Positions 1-64,000 of a stretch of 64,000 nucleotides of DNA are shown one piece after another. A model generated the notes under the pieces. It did no database searches. It was not told the origin of the DNA and saw nothing but the letters and a program-made list of their open reading frames with translations. Every line of letters starts with the position of its first letter. The first letter of the stretch is position 1. The position numbers and the translations under genes were made by a program. The stretch is from IMG/VR virus record IMGVR_UViG_3300023174_002543, positions 303,105 through 367,104 of that record, one strand, 5' to 3'.

Positions 1-46
1 TTTGGTCAATGATTGATACTTGTACGCCTGGTGAATTTAATGCCAT
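1..46 (-). CDS. Tail sheath protein (T4 gp18-like), 5' end only; continues off the window
   Basis: Manual translation MALNSPGVQVSIIDQ..., the typical 'SPGV' N-terminus of sheath proteins; AAGGA RBS and TAAATA late-promoter motif upstream; next to neck genes. Confidence 0.75.
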   Translation of the reverse strand, partial: MALNSPGVQVSIIDQ

Positions 47-163
47 TTTGTTTTCCTTTAAATGTTATGTATAGGGTTCATTCCCGTCATAGTAATATTT
101 AGCATAGGATCGTAAAAATACCCCAATAACCATGCCTTCGAAGGTTATTTGCTAAATAATAGC

Positions 164-505
164 ATGAGACCTATATGCAAGACCTGCAACAAAAATTTTT
201 GTGCTATTAATTATAAACGTGATGATGTTACACACTATCGTAGCGGATGTGATGAGTGTGGTAGAAAGAAGAAAAAGTTAGTAGCTAGGATGCCCGGATG
301 GCAAAAAGCAAATTACAAGAAAAAAACCACATGTGATTTGTGCGGTTTTCATAGTATCTATCCCAGTCAAACATTAGTCTATCACATAGACGGTGATTTG
401 AAAAATGTAAAATTTAACAACCTCAGAACTATATGTTTAAACTGTGTTGAGGTTATTAAACGCAAAGAAGTTACATGGCGTAGGGGTGACTTAGCAGTTG
501 ATTAA
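164..505 (+). CDS. Zn-binding HNH-type endonuclease-like protein
   Basis: Several CxxC pairs and a H-x-DG...N..NLxTxCxNC HNH-like tail; likely ATG at 164, 5 nt after TAAATA. Confidence 0.65.
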   Translation: MRPICKTCNKNFCAINYKRDDVTHYRSGCDECGRKKKKLVARMPGWQKANYKKKTTCDLCGFHSIYPSQTLVYHIDGDLKNVKFNNLRTICLNCVEVIKRKEVTWRRGDLAVD

Positions 506-1126
506 GTGTTCTATTTGACTGTGTAGATTGTCGATAGAGCCATTATTATCAATATAATAGTCATAATTTAACCCCACGCTACTATATTCACTAGCATGAA
601 TTTTAAGTTTATCTAATTTAGATTTGCTCACTGCCCATAATGCATTACCGTCTGGACCTTTATTATAGTTAACTGCGGAATCATACCATTCTGGTCTTTC
701 ACCGCGCTCAACTCGCATAGTTATACCACCTGCATTTTTGATAGCATTAACTTCATTGGCAAAACGACAATCAGTAATTACGATATTATCTTTTGCTTTG
801 CGTAGTTGATTTTCAACGCTTGCTACCCAAATATCATTATGAAACCCGTTACGACAAACTTCTGTTCCCCATTGTTGTAATACCCAGCGCGGGGTAAGTT
901 CAGGCATATTTAAACGCTCACTCCACCATATATCTAGTTGTTCACGCCATTCTCTACTAGACTTTGTAGTACCTTCAAGCAATTCACGATCCCAACCAAA
1001 GACTGCGGCACATGCATCCTTCAATGTACCTGCAAAACTAATACGTTTATATCCGTGAAATGTTGTAAGATAATCTGCAATAGTGTCCTTACCACTACCA
1101 ATAAACCCTGTAATACCTATAATCAT
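491..1126 (-). CDS. Deoxynucleoside monophosphate kinase (T4 gp1-like)
   Basis: IIGITGFIGSGKDT P-loop, PRWVLQQWGTE, ITDCRFANE, HASE motifs; AGGAG RBS supports start at 1126. Confidence 0.9.
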   Translation of the reverse strand: MIIGITGFIGSGKDTIADYLTTFHGYKRISFAGTLKDACAAVFGWDRELLEGTTKSSREWREQLDIWWSERLNMPELTPRWVLQQWGTEVCRNGFHNDIWVASVENQLRKAKDNIVITDCRFANEVNAIKNAGGITMRVERGERPEWYDSAVNYNKGPDGNALWAVSKSKLDKLKIHASEYSSVGLNYDYYIDNNGSIDNLHSQIEHLINC

Positions 1127-1186
1127 AAAACAAAACTCCTGTAATATAATTATACTACAATAGTGTGACAAAAGTAAATGATTAGG

Positions 1187-2026
1187 TTATATTAATTTAG
1201 AAAGATTTGGGTCGGATAAAATAAATTGTTTTGCTTTTTTAATATCCGTTTCACTTACACCTTCCATAGTGTAAACATAACGGGCATCTTCTTCTGATAT
1301 TGGTACTAGTTTGATACTTTCAATCTTATTGTTAAAGTATAAATTTTTAGGCTTTCCACGATGAAGACCATCAACGTCTATCCATTCTATTTGGTCAAAT
1401 GATTTTACACAACAAATATGAGAAATTTCTGTACTGTCTTCTTCTTCAAAATCATCATAATAGTATCCAGTCCATGCACCTAGGGGTAATTTTGTTAGTT
1501 GATGTAGTGCCATAGCAAATGCATCACACATTCCAGACCTATATATTGATTTAGAATCAGATTCATTAACTTGTTTTGGTCTAGTCAACGTGAATCTTAA
1601 TCCATACTCTGGGCTATAATCTTCCTCTGCATCCCAATTTGGTAATAGTCTTTGAACCATTTTTCTATATAGTGCGATACGACTATTCTCTTTTGCGTCA
1701 AATGCAATTTGTTGTACACTATCACCATAGTATTGTAAAAATTCACGCATAATGTCTACTGCGATTGACATTACTTCTGCTGAGTTCCCTGTACCTGTTG
1801 TACCGAATAATTCTAATTTTTCAGGGTCACTTGCTTGTCGCACTAGACGAAATTGTACTTCCCATTTATGTGGTTTATCATCTCTAAAATGGCTAAATGC
1901 TTGCCATACATAGTCTCTATTACCTACAGTAAATTTAGCAATAGCCTCAGTATCAGCCTTGTATTTCCAAGTCCAGTTTTGTTTACCATGTTGGAATAAT
2001 TCAGCAATGAATTCAGTTGCTCTCAT
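1187..2026 (-). CDS. Two-domain putative internal head protein; C-terminal Cys-His-Asp domain
   Basis: Start MRATEFIAE overlaps the upstream stop (TAATG); C-terminal GMCDAFAMALH...H...WIDVDG. Confidence 0.5.
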   Translation of the reverse strand: MRATEFIAELFQHGKQNWTWKYKADTEAIAKFTVGNRDYVWQAFSHFRDDKPHKWEVQFRLVRQASDPEKLELFGTTGTGNSAEVMSIAVDIMREFLQYYGDSVQQIAFDAKENSRIALYRKMVQRLLPNWDAEEDYSPEYGLRFTLTRPKQVNESDSKSIYRSGMCDAFAMALHQLTKLPLGAWTGYYYDDFEEEDSTEISHICCVKSFDQIEWIDVDGLHRGKPKNLYFNNKIESIKLVPISEEDARYVYTMEGVSETDIKKAKQFILSDPNLSKLI

Positions 2027-2787
2027 TAACCTTGAATCCAAGTCAATGGTTGGCTATAGTCTACGTAATTCTTTAAGTCTAATAATAACTGGTCTTGCAT
2101 TGCTTTGGCTTCTGACTTAAGTGCAGTTCCATTTAATGTAGATCCACCACCTGGTCCTGCAATAGTACCAAATTTTTCACGTGCTTCGCCTATAGTTAGT
2201 TTAAGTTGGCTAAGTGTCCAATCTCCAATCCAAACGCCTGCACCCGGGTCTTGTAATAATTCTGACTCAGGTCTTTGAGTATCGGCCCAAACTAATATTT
2301 GTTCACCGGAACCTTTGATGTTTCGTACTAAACGAATTTGTTTTGTTACAGGATTGAATGTGTAAACAATATATCCACCAAACATACGTGCGGCTAGTTC
2401 GATATACCCTGCATAAAAATCATAGGTTGCTAAACCGCCGGCGGCATTATAATTAAGCAAATATGTATTGAGAATAGCACTTGAAAATGGATCAAAACTA
2501 CTAGCAGCTGGTCCTGTTTCTAGACCAATTGTTCTACGAAATACTTGTCTAACATTTATAAATTCAGGAGGCAAGGTATAAGTATCTACCCCTGATTGCA
2601 ACGTCATTAATGTGTATGATTCAACAGTAGCATTTTGAGCACGTTGGCGATATATTTTAACTGAATATCCATACGCAGCCTCAAAGTGCTCAGGACCAAT
2701 TTCTAAATCAATAATACCGTCACCTAAACGATATCGTAAACTTTGATATAATTCTTGTTTAAGTTCTTCTAAACTTTTTGTAGCCAT
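2026..2787 (-). CDS. Neck protein (T4 gp13-like)
   Basis: RYRLGDGIIDLEI N-terminus and KFGTIAGPGG..LNG C-terminal motif typical of gp13. Confidence 0.8.
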   Translation of the reverse strand: MATKSLEELKQELYQSLRYRLGDGIIDLEIGPEHFEAAYGYSVKIYRQRAQNATVESYTLMTLQSGVDTYTLPPEFINVRQVFRRTIGLETGPAASSFDPFSSAILNTYLLNYNAAGGLATYDFYAGYIELAARMFGGYIVYTFNPVTKQIRLVRNIKGSGEQILVWADTQRPESELLQDPGAGVWIGDWTLSQLKLTIGEAREKFGTIAGPGGGSTLNGTALKSEAKAMQDQLLLDLKNYVDYSQPLTWIQG

Positions 2788-2829
2788 GTAAATCTCCAGA
2801 TAATGTATTTATCTGGAGATCCGGGTACA

Positions 2830-3276
2830 TTACAAATCGCCGTCTTTACGATTCTCAGAGTGATATGCATCAAATGAACCACCGGGATAGCGTGATTCTA
2901 GTTTCTTTACATTCTCTGCAATAACTTCATTGGGGTCTAGATTAAGTGCCCTACAAGCATTAATCCAGTACCACATAACATCACCCAACTCTCGTTTCAT
3001 GTGAAACACATTTTCATCAGTTAGTGCTTTACCTTGAAAGAAAATCTTTTTAGGAATCTCAATAAATTCCCCTGACTCAGCAGCAAGTCCTAAACATGCG
3101 GTTAACAATAAAGGAACATTAACGTTAGGTCCATGTTTCATTTGATTATCATTTAAATCTAGTTCATAGTTTGCATCTATGCGATCCAATGTATCTATGA
3201 ATGTAGTTAAATCATTGCTTGCTTGACTTGTCACCGCCTCTACAAAATCCGCGTACTTGTTCAAATCAATATTCAT
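2830..3276 (-). CDS. MazG-like nucleotide pyrophosphohydrolase
   Basis: GLAAESGEF..KK, ELGDVMWY, N..KL..RYP motifs. Confidence 0.85.
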   Translation of the reverse strand: MNIDLNKYADFVEAVTSQASNDLTTFIDTLDRIDANYELDLNDNQMKHGPNVNVPLLLTACLGLAAESGEFIEIPKKIFFQGKALTDENVFHMKRELGDVMWYWINACRALNLDPNEVIAENVKKLESRYPGGSFDAYHSENRKDGDL

Positions 3277-3452
3277 GGCATATTCCAGGCATCAAATACA
3301 ATAACAGTACCTACAAAAATTTGCACAAGACCAGTACTAGGTTGACCATAACCAAGTAAAGACATTATACCACTTAGTATACTAAGTGTACCCAATGAAT
3401 ATCCAATTTTTTTACGGTTTTCAGTAAACCAAAATACAAATTTATCAATCAT
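3273..3452 (-). CDS. Small two-TM membrane protein (59 aa, not in ORF track)
   Basis: MIDKFVFWFTENRKKIGYSLGTLSILSGIM...VFDAWNMP*; ATGA overlaps at both ends; AAGGAG RBS. Confidence 0.7.
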   Translation of the reverse strand: MIDKFVFWFTENRKKIGYSLGTLSILSGIMSLLGYGQPSTGLVQIFVGTVIVFDAWNMP

Positions 3453-3631
3453 TTCAATAACTCCTTAAACATTTGTTTTCTGCCTTGCACACCAATTTGA
3501 TTATCAAATATTTCTTTAACACGTTGCATCATAGCACATGCCAACATTAGCATTTCCTCGTCATTATCAGTTAATTGTATACACTTATTAACTGGTTCCA
3601 TCATTTCTATCATTCGTTTTTCTATATCCAT
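3449..3631 (-). CDS. Hypothetical protein
   Basis: 60-aa ORF translationally coupled to its neighbours. Confidence 0.65.
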   Translation of the reverse strand: MDIEKRMIEMMEPVNKCIQLTDNDEEMLMLACAMMQRVKEIFDNQIGVQGRKQMFKELLK

Positions 3632-4788
3632 TAGAACGCCTTTAAAATAATCATATTTTCATTAAAGCGTCCTGTTGGTACAGTACCTACTGCTTTAATA
3701 TCTTTAAAATATTTACGTGCCGCGGGCTTACTTCCCATAATTTCTTTAATTTGTTCGCCGGGTTTACGTAGTGTTTTAATTTCACTGGTAGTATTATCAA
3801 ATCCAAGAATCGTATTACCTTTTACAGTAAACGCTTTTGAATAATCATCTGCAATATAGTGATGCAATTTACGCCTTGCAGTGTCATAGACCCATGCCTC
3901 GCTTGCACCATGCAACTTAGTTGGATGTACACTAATCAAGTCAAGTTTATTAGCAGGTTCTTTAAACTCTTTCAAGTACTTAAGTTTGCTAACAATCTTT
4001 TCTACAGGCACTGCCTTCTTTTTGCGAGGTGCTTTACTTGCTTTCTTAATGCTAATATAACTATTGAGGTCACTTAGTACCTGTTCAATGAATTTAAGTG
4101 TATTACGTAATTGGACCTTACCTAAATTGCCATAAGCCTCTTTAAGTTCTTTGTCATCAGTTTCGGATACTTCCTCAAATTCTAATTGTTTCTTCTTCCA
4201 TATCTCAACAATCAATGGAATATGTTGTGGCATGACATTAAATTTTGCAACTAAATCAACTGTCTTTTGCGTTACTTTACCTTCAGTAATAAATTCATCA
4301 AAAATGCCTTCAAGTTCACCTGCCGCATCACGTGCTTTTTCACGCATCAATTCCTGAATGTTAGGGCGATTACTAGGTGCTACTTCTTTTTCAATGACTT
4401 CTGGTTTGTTCACTACTTTAACTAGTCGGCTAATTTCATTTTGTAATGTAAGTTCTTCATGCTCGGTTAATTCTAATCCACGCAATGTCATGCGGGCAAG
4501 CCAACACAATGTCATTAAAAATTCTTTTTCATCAACCTTGCGAATAATCTTGGCATCAGACTCACGATTATTGTGGTCTAAATATTGTGCTAGTAGTTCT
4601 TTGGCGTCTTTTTTTCCATAGAAACGATTGTACCATGTAAAACCATATGTAAGTGCGACTGTACGACTTCCGCCCTCAGGTTGAACTGGAAAAAAGGGCT
4701 CGTCACCCATATACTTTGTATCAGCATCACGCGGATTCAATGCTTTGATAAAGTGGTCTGATGTTGCTTTGGGTTTACGTGTTGCCAT
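3631..4788 (-). CDS. Hypothetical protein, probably early
   Basis: Long ORF; start revised to MATRKPK (AGGAG RBS) downstream of a sigma70-type promoter. Confidence 0.75.
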   Translation of the reverse strand: MATRKPKATSDHFIKALNPRDADTKYMGDEPFFPVQPEGGSRTVALTYGFTWYNRFYGKKDAKELLAQYLDHNNRESDAKIIRKVDEKEFLMTLCWLARMTLRGLELTEHEELTLQNEISRLVKVVNKPEVIEKEVAPSNRPNIQELMREKARDAAGELEGIFDEFITEGKVTQKTVDLVAKFNVMPQHIPLIVEIWKKKQLEFEEVSETDDKELKEAYGNLGKVQLRNTLKFIEQVLSDLNSYISIKKASKAPRKKKAVPVEKIVSKLKYLKEFKEPANKLDLISVHPTKLHGASEAWVYDTARRKLHHYIADDYSKAFTVKGNTILGFDNTTSEIKTLRKPGEQIKEIMGSKPAARKYFKDIKAVGTVPTGRFNENMIILKAF

Positions 4789-4813
4789 AAATACTCCTGT
4801 TACGATAAGACAT

Positions 4814-4842
4814 ATTATACGATATATCCTATTTATTGTCAA
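4814..4842 (-). promoter_or_regulatory. sigma70-type early promoter TTGACA(ATAAAT)-17-TATAAT
   Basis: Consensus -35/-10 with 17-bp spacer; member of a 6-copy family. Confidence 0.8.
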
Positions 4843-4908
4843 GCCTAAAAAGGTAATACTTACTTACTACAAATGGGCTGATAAATACTAGATATATCGG
4901 ATACAAAC

Positions 4909-6825
4909 ATGCCTAGACTCTCCTTATACCGTAGTGAAAAATCAAATGATTATAGATTTTTTGACAGAACCATAGCAGAAATGCTAGATGTTGGTGCGAC
5001 TGATTTGTACATTCACAAGTACAAGGGTATCCAAGACAATGGTCCTACTGATAGCTTGAGTACTCCTAGACAAACTAGTACCGATCCAACAAAGATACAA
5101 GACTTATTATTCTTAGAGAATCGTGACCGTGTATATGACAAAGACATTTATAGATTGCGAGGGCACTATAATGTTCAAAACTTGGATTTTGATTTAAGTC
5201 AGTTTGGATTATTCCTCAATAATGATACAATTTTTATCACAGTACATTATAATAAGATGATAGAAATTGTTGGACGTAAATTAATGGTTGGTGACGTTAT
5301 TGAATTACCTCATCTAACAGATTATCATCCATTAAATGAAACAATACCCACTAGTTTACGCAGATATTATCAAATTACAGATGGTAACTTTGCCAGCGAA
5401 GGATTTAGTAATACTTGGTATGCACATTTATGGCGTATTAAATGTGAGCCATTAGTAGATACTCAGGAGTTTAGTAATATTCTTAAGCAACCAACAAGTA
5501 CAGATAATTATCTAGGTGACTGGAATAAGACAGCCACATATGTCCCGGGATATGTAGTTAGTTATGGTAATAAAAATTATATCTCCCAACAAAATGTACC
5601 AGTAGGTACACCTTGTACAAAAATAGATCCATATACAGGGACATACGTAGTTAATTCACCGTTCTGGGCACTAGATACCGCAGACAATTTAAAAGATATA
5701 TTAGGTAGATATAATCAAAACATTGAAGTAAATGACGCACTGGTCGCAGAAGCTACTAGAATTCTTCCTAGTTCAGGGTACGATAGGCGTCAATTATATC
5801 TTGTACCGACTGATCCTAGTACAAGACAGCCGCAATTACCTAAGGGTATATTAACTAGCAAGGGTGCTCCATTAACCGCAACAGTTCAAATGGTTCAAGG
5901 ATCAAGATATAGTCCTAGCCCTGGTATCATTATTGGTGCTGGTGCATTGAAAAACTTTTTAGACCAACCAATCGGCAGTAGTGATTTATTAAAAGCCTTT
6001 ATGAAGATGACATTAGAGGTTGAACAAGTTGAGCCTGATAGATTAGACACTGGTGGTGGCCAAGTGTCAGGTGATTTTGTTATTGCCGCAAGTGCAACTG
6101 CATTAATTGATAGACCATACGGCACAAGTGATAATACATATTCAGTTTCTAGTGATTATCCAAGTAGCATTGTAACCACGGTTGTTGCTCCTGCAGGTGC
6201 TACAGTTATTAATGTATTAGAATCTCCCAAAGATGCACATCCAGGTATTGATTTAACTGCAACCATTACTACATTGAATGGTCAAACCGCTGAAGTATTT
6301 GATACCGGTACAGTAATTGTAAGTAGAGATTTAGTTAATAAAACGTTTACAATAAATAAACCAACATTGTTTGCAATGCCAGTTAACACAACAATTACTA
6401 TTGCGGGTCGTAGTTTTACCGGTACAATAACAGAAGAAATGGATTATCGTGCTGACGCTGATCCAAGATTCAACTATGTTGTAAATTATACTCCAACAGG
6501 ATTTGGTTATTCTGGTGGATACATGACAGGTGACGGGACTGCACCCAATGGATTACCTTTTGAATCAGGAATAACATTTCCTAATAATCCTGCATTAGGT
6601 GATTACTTCTTAAGAACAGATTATCTTCCACAGACTATGTATCGTTATGATGGTAGTTTATGGGTACAAATAAGTAAAAATGTACGTGCTAGTGTTGGAC
6701 CAAATAGTAATCAAACACAAATGGGTTCATTTATTAATAATACTGCAACTACAACGTTGACTGATGGTACTGTAATTCCACAAAGTCAAGCACTATCATC
6801 ACTATTCAAAATAACACCAGATTAA
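4909..6825 (+). CDS. Neck/head-closure protein (T4 gp14-like) with long C-terminal extension
   Basis: LSQFGLF..D.IFITVH, GDVIELPH motifs; upstream of gp15-like gene; ATAAATA upstream. Confidence 0.6.
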   Translation: MPRLSLYRSEKSNDYRFFDRTIAEMLDVGATDLYIHKYKGIQDNGPTDSLSTPRQTSTDPTKIQDLLFLENRDRVYDKDIYRLRGHYNVQNLDFDLSQFGLFLNNDTIFITVHYNKMIEIVGRKLMVGDVIELPHLTDYHPLNETIPTSLRRYYQITDGNFASEGFSNTWYAHLWRIKCEPLVDTQEFSNILKQPTSTDNYLGDWNKTATYVPGYVVSYGNKNYISQQNVPVGTPCTKIDPYTGTYVVNSPFWALDTADNLKDILGRYNQNIEVNDALVAEATRILPSSGYDRRQLYLVPTDPSTRQPQLPKGILTSKGAPLTATVQMVQGSRYSPSPGIIIGAGALKNFLDQPIGSSDLLKAFMKMTLEVEQVEPDRLDTGGGQVSGDFVIAASATALIDRPYGTSDNTYSVSSDYPSSIVTTVVAPAGATVINVLESPKDAHPGIDLTATITTLNGQTAEVFDTGTVIVSRDLVNKTFTINKPTLFAMPVNTTITIAGRSFTGTITEEMDYRADADPRFNYVVNYTPTGFGYSGGYMTGDGTAPNGLPFESGITFPNNPALGDYFLRTDYLPQTMYRYDGSLWVQISKNVRASVGPNSNQTQMGSFINNTATTTLTDGTVIPQSQALSSLFKITPD

Positions 6826-8687: not shown

Positions 8688-9689
8688 TTAAGCGTTGTCA
8701 ATCTTTACAGAAGTATTTAATACTGCAGCATCAAAAGACCACGGTACACTTGAATTAGTAGCAAATTGTGTACCTGTGCCACGTGTTAGTGTACAACGAC
8801 GGGCTCCAATTTTAGTAACAAAATATGTACCGCCTGCGCTATCTGTAGCACCAATAGTCATTTTACCGGTATCTGTTGCTGCAGATGAAGACAATGCGCT
8901 AGACTTTAATTCGCAAATTGCAGTACCCGATGTAGTTTTAACTTTGAAACGTTTGGTGCTACGTTGTTTAATGATATCTGCAGGTTGTGCATTTGTGATA
9001 GCATCAGAAATTTTAGCATAACAGAAAATTGCATTTTCTTGATTAGTACTTGAACCAATTGCACCTGTATCAGCAGTCAACACGATTGTACCTGCTGGCG
9101 GTGTAAAAGCTGCACCGTTAGCTAACGTAACTGTAAATGTTTCACCACCGCCGTAACCAGAACCTTTTTCATTGATAACTGTGTTAACAATTTTTAATTG
9201 AATGTCAACCGTAAATGTGGCTGCTCCGGAACCTGTTCTTCTAGTAAGAGCAACGGTTTGCAAGTCTGTTAACAATGAAGTTGTACTACCCGGGGCTGTT
9301 ACTGTGAATAAAGCATTTGCTGCAGCTAAACTACCAACAGTAACTATTAATCCTGGAATACTAGCATATTCGTATGTTTCACCGGTGACTAGTCCAGCTT
9401 TGCCAGCTCCGGTTGTAACTGCTGCCGCACCAAAGTAGTTTGTCCAAGTTGCTTGGACGCCGCCCGGTAATGTTGGAGCTGGTAATTGTAAGCCTGCTAA
9501 CGGAGCGGCTGCGCCACCTGCTGTTGATAACCATGAACCACGATTAGACCAGTTAATTGATGCAATACCTTCGCCACCGATTTTATCGTCTGCTGGAGTG
9601 ATTTGATTACCATTTTCATCAACAGTTAATTGTTGACCACCGGTACCGATGTTGCGGTTACCGAAATATTTTTGATTGATTTTTGCCAT
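8688..9689 (-). CDS. Virion structural protein (Gly/Ala/Thr-rich)
   Basis: Composition, GSGY motif, late promoter, structured leader, downstream terminator. Confidence 0.6.
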   Translation of the reverse strand: MAKINQKYFGNRNIGTGGQQLTVDENGNQITPADDKIGGEGIASINWSNRGSWLSTAGGAAAPLAGLQLPAPTLPGGVQATWTNYFGAAAVTTGAGKAGLVTGETYEYASIPGLIVTVGSLAAANALFTVTAPGSTTSLLTDLQTVALTRRTGSGAATFTVDIQLKIVNTVINEKGSGYGGGETFTVTLANGAAFTPPAGTIVLTADTGAIGSSTNQENAIFCYAKISDAITNAQPADIIKQRSTKRFKVKTTSGTAICELKSSALSSSAATDTGKMTIGATDSAGGTYFVTKIGARRCTLTRGTGTQFATNSSVPWSFDAAVLNTSVKIDNA

Positions 9690-9782
9690 TTTATTTTTCC
9701 TTTATGTTATGGGCGTTCTAGGCCTACGCAGTGGCGTTCTGCGTAAACTCTCGTTTTAAGAGCGAACTATGTATTTATCTTT

Positions 9783-59992: not shown

Positions 59993-60121
59993 TTAAATAG
60001 TTTCGTAATCTTCTTTACCTACACCGCATTCCGGGCATAGAAAATCTGCAGGCAAATCTTCCCATTTACCTTCTATTTCTTCATCGTGGATATGTCCACA
60101 TACTACGCATACGTGTTCCAT
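59993..60121 (-). CDS. Rubredoxin (42 aa, not in ORF track)
   Basis: MEHVCVVCGHIHDEEIEGKWEDLPADFLCPECGVGKEDYETI*; CxxCG...CPxCG; TAATG-coupled to rubrerythrin. Confidence 0.9.
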   Translation of the reverse strand: MEHVCVVCGHIHDEEIEGKWEDLPADFLCPECGVGKEDYETI

Positions 60122-60585
60122 TATTGAACCTCCTGTAACATTTTTTGATAAGCAGTAGCATGACGTTCTTCAACTCGTTTTAGTGCAGAGAAACGTTTTT
60201 GTGCTTTGTCTAATACTGCCTTAAATTGTTCAGCGTGTTCTTTGCTTTCTGCAATTTGACCACGCATTTCTTGTGCTACTTCATTAGCACCTTCCATCAT
60301 AGCATCTGCTTCCATGTTAGGATACATAACAGTGAATTCTTGTGTTTCACCTTCAATAGCCTTTTCTAAACATTGCACTGTTGTTGGTTTGCCGATTAGT
60401 AATTCTAAATGCCCCCATGCATGTAGGATTTCTTGGTCTGCGGTATGTTCAAAGTGTTTTGCAACATCCTCGAACCCCTCTTCCCTTGCTATTTTTGCAA
60501 AATAACGATACTTGATATGAGCCATACTCTCACCTGCAAGTGCGTATTCTAAGTTTTTTAGTGTCGCTGATTGATTTTGTGACAT
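60121..60585 (-). CDS. Rubrerythrin (short, di-iron domain only)
   Basis: ALAGESMA, EILHA, EGETQE.TVMYP, ESKEHA, VEERHA. Confidence 0.88.
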   Translation of the reverse strand: MSQNQSATLKNLEYALAGESMAHIKYRYFAKIAREEGFEDVAKHFEHTADQEILHAWGHLELLIGKPTTVQCLEKAIEGETQEFTVMYPNMEADAMMEGANEVAQEMRGQIAESKEHAEQFKAVLDKAQKRFSALKRVEERHATAYQKMLQEVQ

Positions 60586-60698
60586 AGTTTTCCTTTATTC
60601 GAACTGAATTCTACTTTATATTGATAGATAAGTCAACAAGTTTTGGATATATTCCCATTTGTATTAATTGTGTCATATTATACGTCATAAATATCATA

Positions 60699-61358
60699 AT
60701 GAGACCCACAATAGCCCTATTCATTGCTGATCCAAAATGCTCAGTTCAGAGCGGAAATGGTATTATAAAAGCATTGGGAGAACACTATAACTTCAAATTA
60801 TTCTCAAAAAATGCATTAGAAGATAATTTCTTCGAGGGAGTAGATATAGTAGCAGTTCCCGGAGGACTCGGAGATAGTGACAGCTACAATACTCTATTGA
60901 AACATAGTGCAAATCGTATCCGTAAATTTGTTAGTAACGGTGGACGATATCTTGGGATATGTATGGGGGCATATTGGGCTGATAGTCACTACTTCAATAT
61001 ACTAGATGATGTTAGGGTAGTTCAATATATCAAACAACCAAATACTTGTACTAGACGACCACATGCTAAAAACATGCCTGTCATGTGGAAGGATCGATAT
61101 GGTATGGTAGAACCATACAAGATGTTTTTTTATGATGGATGTGCATTAGTAGGTGATAATACTAAATTTGAAACCGTTGCGACTTATAGTAACGGTGATG
61201 CGATGGCTATTATACAAAATCGTATAGGATTAATAGGGTGTCATCCAGAAAGTGAACAGTTTTGGTATGATAGTTACAGTTGGATGCGAGGTTACTATCA
61301 CCGCGGCCAACATCATACACTATTATTAGATTTTGTTAATTCTTTGATGAAGAGGTAA
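60699..61358 (+). CDS. Class I glutamine amidotransferase-like (BPL-N-type) protein
   Basis: VPGG, YLGICMGAY nucleophile elbow, GCHPE; start revised to 60699. Confidence 0.8.
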   Translation: MRPTIALFIADPKCSVQSGNGIIKALGEHYNFKLFSKNALEDNFFEGVDIVAVPGGLGDSDSYNTLLKHSANRIRKFVSNGGRYLGICMGAYWADSHYFNILDDVRVVQYIKQPNTCTRRPHAKNMPVMWKDRYGMVEPYKMFFYDGCALVGDNTKFETVATYSNGDAMAIIQNRIGLIGCHPESEQFWYDSYSWMRGYYHRGQHHTLLLDFVNSLMKR

Positions 61359-61479
61359 CTTCCTCTTTCTTCTTTTCCTTGACTACTGGTTCAGGTAAGT
61401 GAGGAGCAATTACATAATAGTTGGCGCCCCACCAACCTAATGCTGACAAAAATCCTATCACAATATATTCTGCTATCAT
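61336..61479 (-). CDS. Small single-TM protein (47 aa, not in ORF track)
   Basis: MIAEYIVIGFLSALGWWGANYYVIAP...; AAAGGA RBS. Confidence 0.6.
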   Translation of the reverse strand: MIAEYIVIGFLSALGWWGANYYVIAPHLPEPVVKEKKKEEVTSSSKN

Positions 61480-61495
61480 ATTAATCCTTTAAATT

Positions 61496-61519
61496 AAAAA
61501 AGGCTCCTAAGAGCCTTTT
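61496..61519 (-). terminator. Intrinsic terminator
   Basis: AAAAGGCTC-TTAG-GAGCC followed by a U-tract. Confidence 0.85.
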
Positions 61520-61536
61520 ATTAGCATGTTCCTAAA

Positions 61537-62088
61537 TTAGAAACTACGTGTGTACTGTAGACGCCATGCATCTTTTTCTTCATCACCATAGCTACGGCTC
61601 CAACGAACTGCAACTGCATCTTGTTTAGTAAGCGCATAACCTACTGCAACGTGACCGCGTGTGGTTCTGAAACTATTACCAGACTCAAACGCATTGCGAT
61701 AACGAGCACCAACATCACCGGTGAAACCAGCTCCAAGAGGAATCTTAACACCACCATCAACTGCATAATGACTAAAGTGGGTACTGCTAGTTACTTTTTC
61801 ACCCAAACGTCCACCTAAATAGAACATATCGAAAGTTCTTTTGACACGTACTTCTAGTCCTTGAGAAATAGAACCACTGCCATATGCAGTTTGACTATTT
61901 TCCATTTTGATGCTGTAATCCATTGCGCCATCCTTAGTGCCGACAACGATTGCTTCTTTAATATTGTTTGCACCAGTTGTACGATTATTTTCATCAGAAT
62001 ATTCCAATGATGCATAGCCACCTGAGGCCATTGCGGAACCTGCAATCAATAAAGTTGCGAATGTTGTTGCTAGTTTTGTAAATCTCAT
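61537..62088 (-). CDS. Outer-membrane beta-barrel (porin-like) protein
   Basis: Signal peptide ending AMA, alternating beta-strand pattern, C-terminal QYTRSF beta-signal. Confidence 0.75.
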   Translation of the reverse strand: MRFTKLATTFATLLIAGSAMASGGYASLEYSDENNRTTGANNIKEAIVVGTKDGAMDYSIKMENSQTAYGSGSISQGLEVRVKRTFDMFYLGGRLGEKVTSSTHFSHYAVDGGVKIPLGAGFTGDVGARYRNAFESGNSFRTTRGHVAVGYALTKQDAVAVRWSRSYGDEEKDAWRLQYTRSF

Positions 62089-62154
62089 TTTATCTCCTTG
62101 TGTGTTAAATGATTATATATTTATAGTTCGAAATATGACAGAAATAATATTGTC

Positions 62155-62463
62155 TTATTCATTACTATTTGGCAGACCGTTGCTATGGCGATCTCGAACT
62201 TCATCCAAATCTTGAAACAATCTATGTTCCTGTACCGTCAACTTATCCTTATGTGTTTTACGCGGATTACCGCATATATAACATTCTGAATTACCACAAT
62301 CCATTGCATGATGTTTTGATAAACGATGTGGTTCTTTTATGACTTTAGGAGTTATGTCACCCGGGATGTGCGATGCTTTAGCAATTTTAACTTGCTTTTT
62401 AATAGCATTCTCATCCTTGAGTAAACGCTTAGAATGTTTGAATTTATCATGTTCGGTGCTCAT
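62155..62463 (-). CDS. Basic hypothetical protein with Cys cluster
   Basis: DCGNSECYICGNPR. Confidence 0.65.
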   Translation of the reverse strand: MSTEHDKFKHSKRLLKDENAIKKQVKIAKASHIPGDITPKVIKEPHRLSKHHAMDCGNSECYICGNPRKTHKDKLTVQEHRLFQDLDEVRDRHSNGLPNSNE

Positions 62464-62483
62464 AGTTCGTATGATATACTAAA

Positions 62484-63194
62484 CTATGTGATTTGTCTAG
62501 CATTAGCTAACCCAAACAACGTGAATATGGTCAACCACATATAACCCACATCAAATTCATACCACTTCTTGCTTAGGCGAGGACTTGCTGGGTTTAAGTG
62601 GTGATTGTTGTGTAATTCTTCACCGCCAATAATAATACCCCAAGGACTAATGTTTCTGCTATCATCTTTAGTTTCACCATTACGATATCCAATCCAATGT
62701 CCAATGCCGTTAATGACGCCAGCTGCCCAGAATGGTATCCATATCATTTGTATGCCCCATATTAATATTCCCCAATATCCAAAGACTACCGTGTTGAACA
62801 AAAAGAGAATGCTAATGCCAGATCTGGAGTAAGGAGTGTATATGTTGTGCTCCATCCAATCAGAAGGAGTACCAACACCATATGTATCAACCATATCTTT
62901 ATCTTTTGATGCTTCATGGTATAATAATGCTCCTTTAAAAAATACTTGTTTAATTCCGTACACATGCGGGCTGTGTGGATCACCCTCTGTATCACTATAT
63001 CTATGATGCTTACGATGTATTGCTACCCATTGCTTGGTGACCATACCTGTGGTTAACCATAACCAAAAGCGCATGAAGTGACTTAGTATAGGGTGAAAGA
63101 TTATTCCTTTGTGTGCCTGACCTCTATGTAAGAATAGGGTGACACAAATGATAGTAATATGTGTTACTATCAATGTATAGATTATATATGTCAT
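62484..63194 (-). CDS. Delta-9-type fatty acid desaturase
   Basis: Three His boxes HRGQAH, HRKHH, HNNHH; GDPHSP. Confidence 0.92.
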   Translation of the reverse strand: MTYIIYTLIVTHITIICVTLFLHRGQAHKGIIFHPILSHFMRFWLWLTTGMVTKQWVAIHRKHHRYSDTEGDPHSPHVYGIKQVFFKGALLYHEASKDKDMVDTYGVGTPSDWMEHNIYTPYSRSGISILFLFNTVVFGYWGILIWGIQMIWIPFWAAGVINGIGHWIGYRNGETKDDSRNISPWGIIIGGEELHNNHHLNPASPRLSKKWYEFDVGYMWLTIFTLFGLANARQIT

Positions 63195-63469: not shown

Positions 63470-63541
63470 TTATCGGTTAGCGATATACATAGTGATTTCG
63501 AAACCGAAGCGCATATCGCTTGCTGTAGGTTTTGTCCACAT
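63470..63541 (-). CDS. pqqA: Pyrroloquinoline quinone precursor peptide PqqA (23 aa, not in ORF track)
   Basis: MWTKPTASDMRFGFEITMYIANR*, with W-x-x-P, RFGFE and the E-x3-Y core; AAAGGAG RBS; own terminator. Confidence 0.93.
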   Translation of the reverse strand: MWTKPTASDMRFGFEITMYIANR

Positions 63542-63603: not shown

Positions 63604-63649
63604 TGATATAGAGAAAATCATTAATCTGATATAGAGAAAATCATTAATC
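63604..63649. repeat. Perfect 23-bp tandem duplication upstream of pqqA
   Basis: TGATATAGAGAAAATCATTAATC x2 (63604-63626, 63627-63649). Confidence 0.9.
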
Positions 63650-63672
63650 TATGTTAGTGTTTACACTTAGAG

Positions 63673-63695
63673 AAAAAGGCTCCTAAGAGCCTTTT
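63673..63695 (-). terminator. Terminator after tmRNA, same sequence as the one at 61.5 kb
   Basis: AAAAGGCTC-TTAG-GAGCCTTTTT. Confidence 0.85.
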
Positions 63696-64000
63696 CTGAT
63701 TTTCTGTTACGAGGTATGTCTTACCCTAGGATGCTTTTATCAAGCAGCCAATGCGAACTGTGAGTCGTTTGCGTTTACTTTTTTCGCTTCTTCGGCCGGG
63801 CCTAACGTCTTTCTATGCTATGAGCATAGCGACTATTACTTTTCCCCCAACCCTACGGTTTTCACATTACCGTGCTGTCCACTCTGTTACTACTTGCCCT
63901 GTCGAAACTATGCAGGCCCATCATAAACATACTGTTTGGACTTTTATTATGAGCATTGTTATCTCATTCACCAGTAGACATTATGTTTATGGTGGACCTG
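63696..64000 (-). ncRNA. ssrA: Two-piece (circularly permuted) tmRNA gene; acceptor piece truncated by the window edge
   Basis: ...CAGGTCCACCA (64000-63990), 70-nt spacer, GGGCCTG-CATAGTTTCGAC (from 63919), tag ORF ANDSQFALAA** (63772-63737); G3.U acceptor pair. The 3' end of the coding piece is approximate. Confidence 0.9.

What the first reader, a model, noticed from the sequence alone, without database searches (positions are those of the whole stretch)
63696..64000. Phage-encoded circularly permuted two-piece tmRNA
Seen: on the minus strand the acceptor 3' end CAGGTCC-A-CCA comes before the 5' end GGGCCTG...TTCGAC. The two form a 7-bp acceptor stem with the G3.U alanine determinant and discriminator A. 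The 70-nt intervening segment extends the helix (ATAAACATA/TATGTTTAT). The tag frame GCA AAC GAC TCA CAG TTC GCA TTG GCT GCT TGA TAA (ANDSQFALAA) follows a TAAAC resume context, then a terminator. Established: permuted ssrA genes occur in Alphaproteobacteria, some cyanobacteria and some Betaproteobacteria. Inference: the phage supplies its own ribosome-rescue RNA; the permutation may be an independent event or may point to the host.
Basis: partly seen in the sequence, partly recalled or inferred. Interest (0 to 1): 0.75.

Follow-up and report, generated by a model that had tools for sequence, protein, structure and literature searches.

The report
Phage two-piece tmRNA gene, truncated
The last 330 bases of this freshwater jumbo-phage contig hold a real circularly permuted (two-piece) ribosome-rescue RNA gene of the betaproteobacterial type, cut off by the assembly. 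Phage genes of this kind are already known, but this one belongs to a very large, apparently undescribed phage family with some unusual traits.

Summary
On the minus strand, CAGGTCC-A-CCA (64000-63990) precedes a 70-nt spacer, then GGGCCUG...UUUCGAC, the tag ANDSQFALAA (63772-63743) and a terminator. Rfam's permuted-tmRNA model passes its cut-off although the gene is cut (52.1 vs 47 bits). The window is the end of an unclosed 367-kb phage contig, so the T-arm cannot be seen here. Contigs identical to the window over about 130-140 nt continue into a T-arm, inter-piece helix strands and a promoter. They score about 130 bits (RF04321) and 120 bits (RF01850, beta type). At least 150 viral contigs carry the family, and every gene with enough flank is permuted. 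Helices covary and tags are conserved. The phage has no SmpB and no integrase, so it must use host SmpB and AlaRS. The permutation is inherited from the betaproteobacterial lineage, not a new event. Two-piece phage tmRNAs are already published, so this is a new member of a known kind. Extras seen: a D-loop/T-loop tertiary covariation (A·G55) found in no bacterial species genome scanned; protein-coding ORFs inside the spacer in relatives (not here); and a recurrent tmRNA-pqqA pairing hinting at a methylotroph host.

The parts
63994..64000 (-). Acceptor-stem 3' strand CAGGTCC, the last 7 nt of the acceptor piece before ACCA. The rest of the acceptor piece (T-arm, P2 5' strands, promoter) lies beyond the contig end.
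   Evidence: The contig end is shown.
63990..63993 (-). Discriminator A plus the encoded CCA 3' end of the acceptor piece.
63920..63989 (-). Intervening segment of 70 nt, removed on maturation. Arms 63989-63982 and 63931-63924 pair and stack on the acceptor stem. The last 4 nt (TGAT) lie opposite ACCA. There is no credible ORF in this copy.
   Evidence: helix paired in 72-77 of 77 unique segments at 8 positions, with up to 6 pair types; the minimum-free-energy fold reproduces it.
63913..63919 (-). Mature 5' end of the coding piece: acceptor 5' strand GGGCCUG (G1 = 63919, G3.U pair).
63902..63912 (-). D-loop analogue CAUAGUUUCGA. It has UAG where tmRNAs usually have UGG.
   Evidence: UAG goes with T-loop G55 in 53 of 53 genes; UGG goes with U55 in 24 of 24.
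63873..63901 (-). 3' strands of the inter-piece helices: proximal P2 CAGGGCA (63901-63895) and distal P2 CAGCA (63877-63873). They pair with the acceptor piece.
   Evidence: model structure; proximal paired 69-73 of 73; distal with compensatory C-G 46 / U-A 17 / U-G 8.
63779..63872 (-). Pseudoknot-1 region: hairpin CGGU...ACCG plus an expansion of about 60 nt containing a hairpin at about 63830-63813.
   Evidence: (the expansion is shared by 8 relatives, with compensatory changes in the hairpin).
63743..63778 (-). Resume context GUAAAC (63778-63773) and the tag reading frame GCA AAC GAC UCA CAG UUC GCA UUG GCU GCU = ANDSQFALAA (63772-63743).
   Evidence: ANDSQFALAA is the commonest tag of the family; GUAAAC precedes the resume codon in 49 genes.
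63737..63742 (-). Tandem stop codons UGA UAA.
63671..63736 (-). 3' tail with the conserved CCUCGUAACAGAA motif and the terminator hairpin AAAAGGCUC-UUAG-GAGCCUUUU followed by a U run (63695-63672).
   Evidence: (aligned to the terminal hairpin of RF01850).
63605..63650 (-). Perfect tandem duplication of a 23-nt unit between the tmRNA terminator and pqqA. Its role is unknown.
   Evidence: 2 exact copies; 0 expected.
63470..63541 (-). Orphan pqqA (23-aa PQQ precursor peptide with the E-x3-Y motif), followed by a terminator at 63464-63442. It is a neighbour that recurs next to this tmRNA family.
   Evidence: (PF08042, 40.2 bits vs cut-off 21.1), (13 relatives carry it downstream of the tmRNA).

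Best explanation
Window 64000-63671 (minus strand) is the downstream three quarters of a functional two-piece (circularly permuted) tmRNA gene of a freshwater jumbo myophage.

**Layout of the whole gene**, as seen in near-identical relatives: promoter; acceptor piece (P2 5' strands, T-arm, acceptor 3' strand, ACCA); 70-nt spacer; then the coding piece. The coding piece holds the acceptor 5' strand, the D-loop analogue, the P2 3' strands, an expanded pseudoknot-1 region, the tag ORF, a tail and a terminator.

**Proposed mechanism:**
1. One precursor folds so that the spacer's ends extend the acceptor stem.
2. tRNA-type processing frees the spacer: RNase P acts at G1 and 3' trimming exposes CCA.
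3. The two RNAs stay together through the acceptor stem and the P2 helices.
4. Host AlaRS charges the RNA through G3.U and A73.
5. Host SmpB delivers it to ribosomes stalled on broken mRNAs.
6. Translation resumes on GCA and appends ANDSQFALAA, a degradation tag.

The likely benefit to the phage is to keep the ribosome pool free while host mRNA is being destroyed.

**Shown:** the sequence anatomy, family membership, covariation, tag conservation, and the absence of a phage SmpB.
**Inferred:** processing, charging, SmpB use and the benefit to the phage.
For: **Family membership**
- RF04321 scores 52.1 bits against a cut-off of 47 on the cut gene. RF01850 scores 55 bits over model positions 103-331.
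- Relatives matching the window over about 133-140 nt (98.5%, two mismatches) complete the gene. L040 scores 130.7 bits on RF04321 and 120.4 bits on RF01850, promoter included.
- ARAGORN calls permuted tmRNAs in about 80 of 119 viral contigs. All 116 with enough flank are permuted.

**Structure**
- Covariation supports the spacer helix, both P2 helices and the T-arm.
- The D-loop analogue and T-loop co-vary perfectly, 53 + 24 genes with 0 mixed forms.
- The minimum-free-energy fold of the precursor gives the expected architecture, z = -2.9.

**Tag**
- Tags keep the AN(D) start and the (A/L/M)(A/V)A end. ANDSQFALAA is the commonest. It is close to the beta-model consensus frame.

**Phage context**
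- The contig has a tail sheath, TerL, DnaB and 33 tRNAs.
- It has no SmpB and no integrase.

**Why the contig ends here**
- Depth at the tRNA-like domain is about 5,590 against a baseline of about 19 in run X3, and unitigs break there.

**Expression (weak)**
- A metatranscriptome contig is identical to the window-specific region 63752-63852.
- 43 of 113 unique upstream regions in the family have a sigma-70 promoter matching at least 10 of 12 positions, against 1 of 113 in shuffles.
Against: - The acceptor piece of this very phage was not seen. It is inferred from contigs that match the window for only about 130-140 nt and diverge afterwards.
- One contig with the same spacer (L141) has a different, canonical T-arm.
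- RF01850 stays below its cut-off of 84 bits on the cut copy.
- The 3' hairpin of the beta model is not formed in the window.
- No RNA ends, aminoacylation or tagging were measured. The RNA-library contig could be carried-over DNA.
- The host is unknown.
Confidence: 0.87

Rival explanations
1. Dead remnant: in the real phage genome the gene lacks its acceptor piece, so no tRNA-like domain can form and the RNA is inert.
For: The T-arm is not in the record. ARAGORN finds nothing in the window or across the joined contig ends.
Against: - The break coincides with a sequence shared by far more abundant genomes, which explains an assembly stop.
- Zero-mismatch unitigs run 16-28 nt past position 64000.
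- All 116 relatives with enough flank have the acceptor piece.
- The window keeps intact P2 3' strands, the tag, the stops and the terminator, identical or near-identical to complete genes.
Confidence: 0.04
2. Host-derived DNA: an attachment-site fragment of a host ssrA gene, or bacterial DNA mis-joined to the phage contig.
For: - Many mobile elements integrate into ssrA and carry pieces of it (stated in PMC9004378 and PMC11915505).
- The gene sits at a contig end.
- The same tmRNA occurs on contigs binned into two Bacteroidota MAGs.
Against: - The window holds the 5' end, the tag and the terminator, not just a 3' ssrA fragment.
- The phage has no integrase.
- The 19-nt tRNA-like motif is absent from one genome each of 185,579 bacterial and archaeal species. 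The only exceptions are two low-GC, tRNA-rich contigs of about 20 kb that look like mis-binned phage, plus two chance hits.
- At least 150 viral contigs carry the family in many different gene contexts.
Confidence: 0.03
3. The gene is intact but serves a different purpose. It might act mainly as a competitor or modifier of host trans-translation. [quoted passage not shown]
For: - The CDS-less mini-tmRNA of mycobacteriophage DS6A inhibits the host tmRNA (cited in PMC11915505).
- PMC9004378 proposes selective tagging as an alternative role.
- The phage lineage has its own D-loop/T-loop variant and some relatives have long, unusual tags.
Against: The tag is a canonical proteobacterial degradation tag under clear conservation. 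The resume context is intact and all parts needed for normal trans-translation are present. Nothing in the sequence separates this reading from plain rescue.
Confidence: 0.1

Closest known systems
Betaproteobacteria two-piece tmRNA (Rfam RF01850 beta_tmRNA; lineage of Sharkady & Williams 2004, as cited in PMC9004378 and PMC11915505)
   Same: - Gene order is the same: acceptor piece, CCA, spacer, coding piece.
- The promoter position, the P2 helices, the PK1 hairpin, the resume context UAAA-GC, a 10-residue tag of the ANDxxFALAA type, the conserved CCUxGUxAC loop motif and the terminal hairpin are all shared.
- Complete relatives score 110-152 bits against a cut-off of 84.
- Alpha-type bacterial genes score only 45-72 bits on this model.
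   Different: - It is carried by phages, not bacteria.
- It is AT-richer.
- The acceptor stem is GGGCCUG.
- The D-loop analogue has UAG and the T-loop is UGCGAAU instead of UGG and UUCGAUU.
- The middle part of the model's P2 is not paired.
- The window has a PK1 expansion of about 60 nt and lacks the model's 3' hairpin stem.
Two-piece tmRNAs of marine phages (OM43 phage Melnitz, pelagimyophages, cyanophages; PMC9004378)
   Same: Phage-encoded, permuted, aquatic, found in large myophages, placed behind an early-type promoter, with no phage SmpB reported. That paper counts 53 permuted forms among 133 unique phage tmRNAs.
   Different: - Melnitz's gene is of the alphaproteobacterial type and carries a glutamine riboswitch.
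- This one is beta-type, from fresh water, with no riboswitch hit.
- blastn found no match in 50,697 deposited phage genomes.
Caulobacter two-piece tmRNA (Keiler, Shapiro & Williams 2000, cited)
   Same: Proof of principle that a permuted gene gives two base-paired RNAs active in tagging. The processing logic is the same.
   Different: It comes from an independent alphaproteobacterial permutation, with a different pseudoknot content and tag.
One-piece tmRNAs of cluster C mycobacteriophages and other isolates
   Same: Phage-borne ribosome-rescue RNA accompanying a large tRNA set.
   Different: Standard (unpermuted) gene form.

Membership tests
tmRNA (any form) | Alanine-identity acceptor stem: 7 bp with G3.U70, discriminator A, CCA end. 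| tested here: met
   GGGCCUG pairs with CAGGUCC, followed by A and CCA. Aligned as the acceptor stem by RF04321 and RF01850.
tmRNA (any form) | T-arm completing the tRNA-like domain. | not testable with these tools
   It lies beyond the contig end. It is present in all relatives, including L040 and L142, which match the window over about 133-140 nt. Letters of the overhanging unitigs were not shown.
tmRNA (any form) | Internal tag frame starting on an Ala resume codon, ending in a hydrophobic ..LAA-type tail and stop codons. | tested here: met
   GCA...GCU UGA UAA encodes ANDSQFALAA. The same tag is the commonest of the family.
tmRNA (any form) | Pseudoknot 1 just upstream of the resume codon. 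| tested here: inconclusive
   The PK1 hairpin CGGU..ACCG is aligned by both models. The second stem was not modelled. The window has a structured expansion of about 60 nt there.
tmRNA (any form) | A partner SmpB is available. | tested here: not met
   There is no PF01668 match in the 367-kb phage record. The phage would have to use host SmpB. The host was not identified.
Permuted / two-piece tmRNA (RF04321) | The acceptor 3' strand plus CCA is encoded upstream of the mature 5' end, separated by a removable spacer. | tested here: met
   CCA is at 63992-63990, G1 is at 63919 and the spacer is 70 nt.
Permuted / two-piece tmRNA (RF04321) | Score at or above the family's gathering cut-off (47 bits). 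| tested here: met
   52.1 bits although 5'-truncated. Complete relatives score 83-139 bits.
Permuted / two-piece tmRNA (RF04321) | Inter-piece P2 helices hold the two RNAs together. | tested here: inconclusive
   The window holds only the 3' strands (63901-63895 and 63877-63873). In relatives the partners exist and covary, and the precursor fold forms them.
Betaproteobacteria-type two-piece tmRNA (RF01850) | Score at or above the gathering cut-off (84 bits). | tested here: inconclusive
   The window's cut copy scores 55 bits over positions 103-331. Complete relatives sharing its 5' part score 110-152 bits. Alpha-type controls score at most 72 bits.
Betaproteobacteria-type two-piece tmRNA (RF01850) | Residence in a betaproteobacterial chromosome. 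| tested here: not met
   The gene is on a phage contig. The tRNA-like 19-mer was found in no bacterial species genome other than phage-like MAG contigs.
ssrA attachment-site fragment of an integrative element | Only a 3' portion of ssrA, next to an integrase. | tested here: not met
   The 5' end, tag and terminator are all present. There is no PF00589 integrase in the record.

The most novel reading that the evidence does not exclude
This phage tmRNA family may have turned the spacer between the two tmRNA halves into a general expression slot for small genes.

**What is seen in relatives:**
- About 34 of 81 unique spacers hold an ORF of 23-151 aa. This includes all 26 spacers of 138 nt or more.
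- The Shine-Dalgarno sequence starts right after the CCA end.
- In most of them the stop codon lies 1 nt before the mature 5' end, or within about 13 nt of it.
- Unrelated proteins therefore share a C-terminal (V)SL that is encoded by the 3' arm of the processing helix.
- The cargo includes membrane peptides, a GNAT domain and a CxxCxxCC domain.

**Implication:** the tRNA-processing cuts that mature the tmRNA would also release a minimal mRNA.

**Status of the window's copy:** it would be the empty-slot form. I found no report of protein-coding cargo in permuted-tmRNA spacers in the library searched.
Probability: 0.45. Interest if true: 0.7.

Novelty: new member of a known kind. Interest (0 to 1): 0.4.

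Why it matters
**For annotation.** A gene caller will miss this RNA because it is cut, or will call the spurious antisense ORF at 63751-63999. The contig break itself is caused by the element.

**For biology.**
- Beta-type two-piece tmRNAs are very widespread in uncultured freshwater phages (at least 150 IMG/VR contigs). They are also far more abundant in lake metagenomes than any single carrier.
- The family offers a natural experiment on the tRNA-like domain: an A·G55 replacement of the G18·Psi55 contact.
- It also offers a natural experiment on precursor processing: spacers of 25-491 nt are all closed by a covarying helix.
- If the spacer ORFs are expressed as proposed, this would be a new way of packing genes into a structural RNA gene.
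- The tmRNA-pqqA pairing, the 36.5% GC content and the beta-type gene together give a testable host hypothesis: Methylophilaceae-like methylotrophs.

Tried and rejected
- **Joining the contig ends.** I tested whether the record is circular. There is no terminal repeat, the start lies inside a Gly-rich coding region, and ARAGORN finds nothing across the junction.
- **Reading the missing bases from runs.** Zero-mismatch unitigs overrun position 64000 by 16 and 28 nt, but their letters are not reported. The only overhang printed belongs to a variant.
- **Finding the same phage elsewhere.** Three contigs share the exact spacer, but they match the window for only about 130 nt.
- **Finding a bacterial source or host.** An exact 19-mer scan of 185,579 species genomes gave only two phage-like MAG contigs and two chance hits.
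- **Sampling Pseudomonadota.** It served only as a negative control.
- **Deposited phages.** blastn against 50,697 deposited phage genomes gave no match.
- **Family searches in the phage.** SmpB, PqqD, PQQ-dependent dehydrogenase and integrase were all absent.
- **T-loop comparison.** My regex to extract T-loops from the bacterial controls failed. The comparison of T-loops therefore rests on the Rfam consensus lines.
- **PK1 hairpin counts.** My first column indexing for the PK1 hairpin was off by one, so those counts are void.
- **tRNAs in spacers.** tRNA-like T-arm motifs in a few spacers were not called as tRNAs by ARAGORN.
- **Not attempted.** No structure or complex prediction was run, because the object is an RNA.

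Full report
**1. What is in the window**

Read on the minus strand from position 64000, the sequence gives these elements in order:
- CAGGTCC at 64000-63994.
- A at 63993.
- CCA at 63992-63990.
- A 70-nt segment at 63989-63920.
- GGGCCTG-CATAG-TTTCGAC from 63919.
- A stretch of about 140 nt.
- GTAAAC, then GCA AAC GAC TCA CAG TTC GCA TTG GCT GCT TGA TAA. The tag ANDSQFALAA lies at 63772-63743 and the stops at 63742-63737.
- A 60-nt tail and a terminator hairpin at 63695-63674.

The two 7-mers form an acceptor stem with G3.U. The ends of the 70-nt segment, TAAACATA and TATGTTTA, extend that stem.

Rfam's tmRNA_permuted model (RF04321) matches 63740-64000 at 52.1 bits. The gathering cut-off is 47 and E = 2.6e-7 for the whole window. 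This holds even though model positions 1-52 are missing. The Betaproteobacteria two-piece model RF01850 aligns 63671-64000 to positions 103-331 at 55 bits, terminator hairpin included. ARAGORN is silent because the gene is incomplete.

**2. Why it is incomplete**

The window is the last 64 kb of a single 367,104-bp IMG/VR virus record that is classed as linear. Position 64000 is the last base of that contig.
- The contig has no terminal repeat.
- Its first bases lie in a Gly-rich coding region.
- Joining the ends gives no tmRNA.

Laying four public runs on the end shows that the assembler's unitigs break exactly at the conserved tRNA-like domain and at the tag. Word depth there rises from about 19 to 5,590 and 3,616 in run X3. 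The element is therefore shared with genomes that are together hundreds of times more abundant than this phage. That is a sufficient reason for the assembly to stop inside the gene. Two zero-mismatch unitigs continue 16 and 28 nt beyond position 64000, so the DNA does go on.

**3. Completing the gene from relatives**

A second pattern for a sister variant hit 35 more.

L040 and L142 carry the window's 70-nt spacer letter for letter. They match the window over about 133-140 nt (98.5%, two mismatches): the acceptor 3' strand, the spacer, the 5' tRNA-like domain and the P2 strands. Upstream they continue with a TTGACA-17-TATAAT promoter, UGCUG...UGUUCUG, GAC, the T-arm GGGGG-UGCGAAU-CCCCC, and then CAGGUCC-ACCA.

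Scores for complete genes:
- L040 scores 130.7 bits on RF04321 and 120.4 bits on RF01850, against a cut-off of 84. The model aligns even the promoter.
- Other complete relatives score 83-139 bits on RF04321 and 110-152 bits on RF01850.
- As a control, the best RF01850 scores among 151 evenly sampled Pseudomonadota genomes were 45-72 bits. Those genes have alpha-type tags.

The family is therefore of the betaproteobacterial two-piece type. The permutation is inherited, not a new event.

**4. Is the family functional?**

- **Gene form.** All 116 loci with enough upstream DNA have the acceptor piece upstream. No one-piece form was found.
- **T-arm.** It is always paired, with a few double changes.
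- **Proximal P2 helix.** It is paired in 69-73 of 73 unique genes.
- **Distal P2 helix.** It shows compensatory C-G (46) / U-A (17) / U-G (8) at one position.
- **Spacer-flanking helix.** It is paired in 72-77 of 77 unique spacers at each of eight positions, with up to six pair types. The mean is 6.7 contiguous pairs against 2.3 when partners are shuffled.
- **Precursor fold.** Folding the L040 precursor alone gives distal P2, proximal P2, the T-arm, and the acceptor stem stacked on the spacer helix (z = -2.9).
- **Tags.** They vary in the middle but keep the AN(D) start and the (A/L/M)(A/V)A end. ANDSQFALAA is the commonest at 34 loci. GUAAAC precedes the resume codon in 49 loci.
- **Promoters.** 43 of 113 unique upstream regions have a sigma-70 promoter matching at least 10 of 12 positions, ending 7-8 nt before the RNA. 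In shuffles the figure is 1 of 113.
- **Window-specific expansion.** The window's insert of about 60 nt in the pseudoknot-1 region is shared by eight relatives, and its hairpin shows compensatory changes.
- **Transcription (weak).** A freshwater metatranscriptome contig is identical to 63752-63852, which includes that insert. This is only a weak sign of transcription.

**5. Context**

- The contig is a contractile-tailed jumbo phage. It has a tail sheath, TerL, a DnaB-type helicase and 33 tRNA genes at 155-170 kb.
- Its terminase is only about 50% identical to those of the PA5oct group, Phosso and Atu_ph07.
- It has no SmpB and no tyrosine integrase. The RNA must therefore rely on host SmpB and AlaRS, and an attachment-site origin is unlikely.
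- The 19-nt tRNA-like motif occurs in no bacterial species genome. The only exceptions are two low-GC, tRNA-rich contigs of about 20 kb binned into Bacteroidota MAGs, most likely mis-binned phage, and two chance matches.
- No deposited phage genome gives a blastn match.

**6. Mechanism (inferred from established tmRNA biology)**

1. One precursor is made.
2. RNase P cuts at G1 and the 3' end is trimmed to CCA.
3. The spacer is discarded.
4. The two RNAs remain paired through the acceptor stem and P2.
5. AlaRS charges the RNA and SmpB docks it in stalled ribosomes.
6. ANDSQFALAA is appended and the product is degraded.

The benefit to a lytic phage that destroys host mRNA is a free ribosome pool. 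Alternative roles, such as competition with the host tmRNA or selective tagging, cannot be excluded from sequence alone.

**7. Comparison with what is known**

Permuted tmRNA genes in Alpha-, Beta- and Cyanobacteria, and the models used here, are described in PMC11915505. Phage-encoded two-piece tmRNAs are already reported. PMC9004378 describes the alpha-type gene of OM43 phage Melnitz. It counts 53 permuted forms among 133 unique phage tmRNAs, nearly all aquatic. The kind is therefore known, and this is a new member: beta-type, from fresh water, in a jumbo phage, and part of a large uncultured family.

**8. Things found on the way**

(a) **Tertiary covariation.**
- Genes with UAG in the D-loop analogue always have G at T-loop position 55 (53 of 53).
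- Genes with UGG always have U (24 of 24).
- There are no mixed forms, although L141 and L142 share an identical spacer between the two halves.
- The window has UAG, so its unseen T-loop is predicted to be UGCGAAU.
- Caveat: there are essentially two clades, so the counts are not independent events.

(b) **Spacer cargo.**
- Spacers range from 25 to 491 nt.
- All 26 unique spacers of 138 nt or more, and several of 84-117 nt, contain an ORF starting 9-24 nt after the CCA end, behind TAAGGA.
- In most cases the ORF ends at the TGA 1 nt before G1, so unrelated proteins share the ending (V)SL.
- pN/pS is 0.15-0.3 in three ORF families.
- One ORF has a GNAT domain and one a CxxCxxCC domain, both above the Pfam cut-offs.
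- The flanking helix is kept across these ORFs: 22 of 26 have 9 of 9 pairs.
- The tmRNA database paper mentions only a tRNA gene and a repeat element in such spacers.
- The window's own spacer has no credible ORF.

(c) **pqqA.**
- A 23-aa PqqA (PF08042, 40.2 bits) follows the tmRNA at 63541-63470.
- The same peptide gene lies downstream of the tmRNA in 13 relatives.
- No PqqD and no PQQ-dependent dehydrogenase is in the phage.
- Viral pqqA was reported in Lake Baikal T4-like viruses of 35% GC that are predicted to infect Methylophilaceae (PMC7678222).
- Together with the phage's 36.5% GC and the beta-type tmRNA, this suggests a Methylophilaceae-like methylotroph host. That is a hypothesis and was not tested.

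**9. Verdict**

It is a new member of a known kind, of moderate interest in itself. The family-level features, above all the spacer ORFs, are the part worth a specialist's attention.

Noticed in passing
Relatives: e.g. L027:10241-10609(-), L044:3185-3517(-), L003:2967-3227(-), L013:2612-2779(+), L020:3038-3106(+). Window spacer 63920-63989 is empty.: In about 34 of 81 unique spacers of this tmRNA family, a complete ORF of 23-151 aa sits between the two tmRNA halves. The SD sequence comes right after the CCA end. In most of them the stop codon lies 1 nt before the mature 5' end. pN/pS is 0.15-0.3, GNAT and CxxCxxCC domains are found, and the flanking helix is retained.
   Followed up: partly
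window 63902-63912 (D-loop analogue); T-loops in L002-L176: There is perfect co-variation between the D-loop analogue (UAG vs UGG) and T-loop position 55 (G vs U): 53 + 24 unique genes and no mixed forms. It looks like a replacement of the G18.Psi55 tertiary contact. The UAG/G55 form was found in no bacterial species genome.
   Followed up: yes
window 63470-63541 (-): An orphan pqqA (23 aa, PF08042 at 40.2 bits) lies directly downstream of the tmRNA. The same gene follows the tmRNA in 13 relatives. The phage has no PqqD and no PQQ-dependent dehydrogenase. This points to a PQQ-using, possibly Methylophilaceae, host.
   Followed up: partly
window 63605-63650 (-): A perfect tandem duplication of a 23-nt unit (AGATTAATGATTTTCTCTATATC) lies between the tmRNA terminator and pqqA. 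It occurs nowhere else in the window and its role is unknown.
   Followed up: partly
window 63779-63872 (-); L003, L034, L044, L068, L069, L084, L086, L099: A sub-family, including the window, has a structured expansion of about 60 nt in the pseudoknot-1 region, with a covarying hairpin. Most relatives have 83-86 nt from G1 to the resume codon; here it is 147 nt.
   Followed up: partly
window 63866-63906 and 63743-63783 (depth in runs X1-X3): Depth over the conserved tmRNA parts is up to about 300 times the phage's own depth, and unitigs break there. The element is shared by many co-occurring genomes and probably caused the contig to end.
   Followed up: partly
L121 (JBDNIA010000294.1, Crocinitomicaceae MAG) and L123 (NZ_JBBAKG010000090.1, Haliscomenobacter MAG): Contigs of about 20 kb binned into Bacteroidota MAGs carry this phage-type beta tmRNA. 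L123 also carries five tRNA genes and a spacer ORF. They are most likely mis-binned phage contigs.
   Followed up: partly
L128 = G003:C1:131426-134661 (hit at 132926-133161, -): There is a second RF04321 hit (67.4 bits, over the cut-off) on contig 1 of the same Haliscomenobacter MAG. ARAGORN calls only a tRNA-Thr in that locus. Unresolved.
   Followed up: no
relatives L060, L062, L079, L088: Some family members have very long tags of 27-35 residues (e.g. ANANTTVTVSGKNIKFSARTAKESLAV), unlike the usual 10-12 residues.
   Followed up: no
window 9687-9763 (-): Rfam freshwater-2 RNA motif (RF02980), 53.8 bits against a cut-off of 49.9, ending at an AUG with an AAGGA before it.
   Followed up: no
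window 63751-63999 (+): An 83-aa open-ended ORF lies antisense to the tmRNA. It is almost certainly spurious but is liable to be called as a hypothetical protein.
   Followed up: no
G000:C1:155234-170028 (outside the window): A cluster of 33 tRNA genes covers nearly all amino acids. There is no SmpB and no integrase in the 367-kb record.
   Followed up: partly
window 60121-63194: The neighbours include a fatty-acid desaturase (62484-63194), a rubrerythrin-like protein (60121-60585) and a GATase/BPL_N protein (60621-61358). These are possible auxiliary metabolic genes.
   Followed up: no
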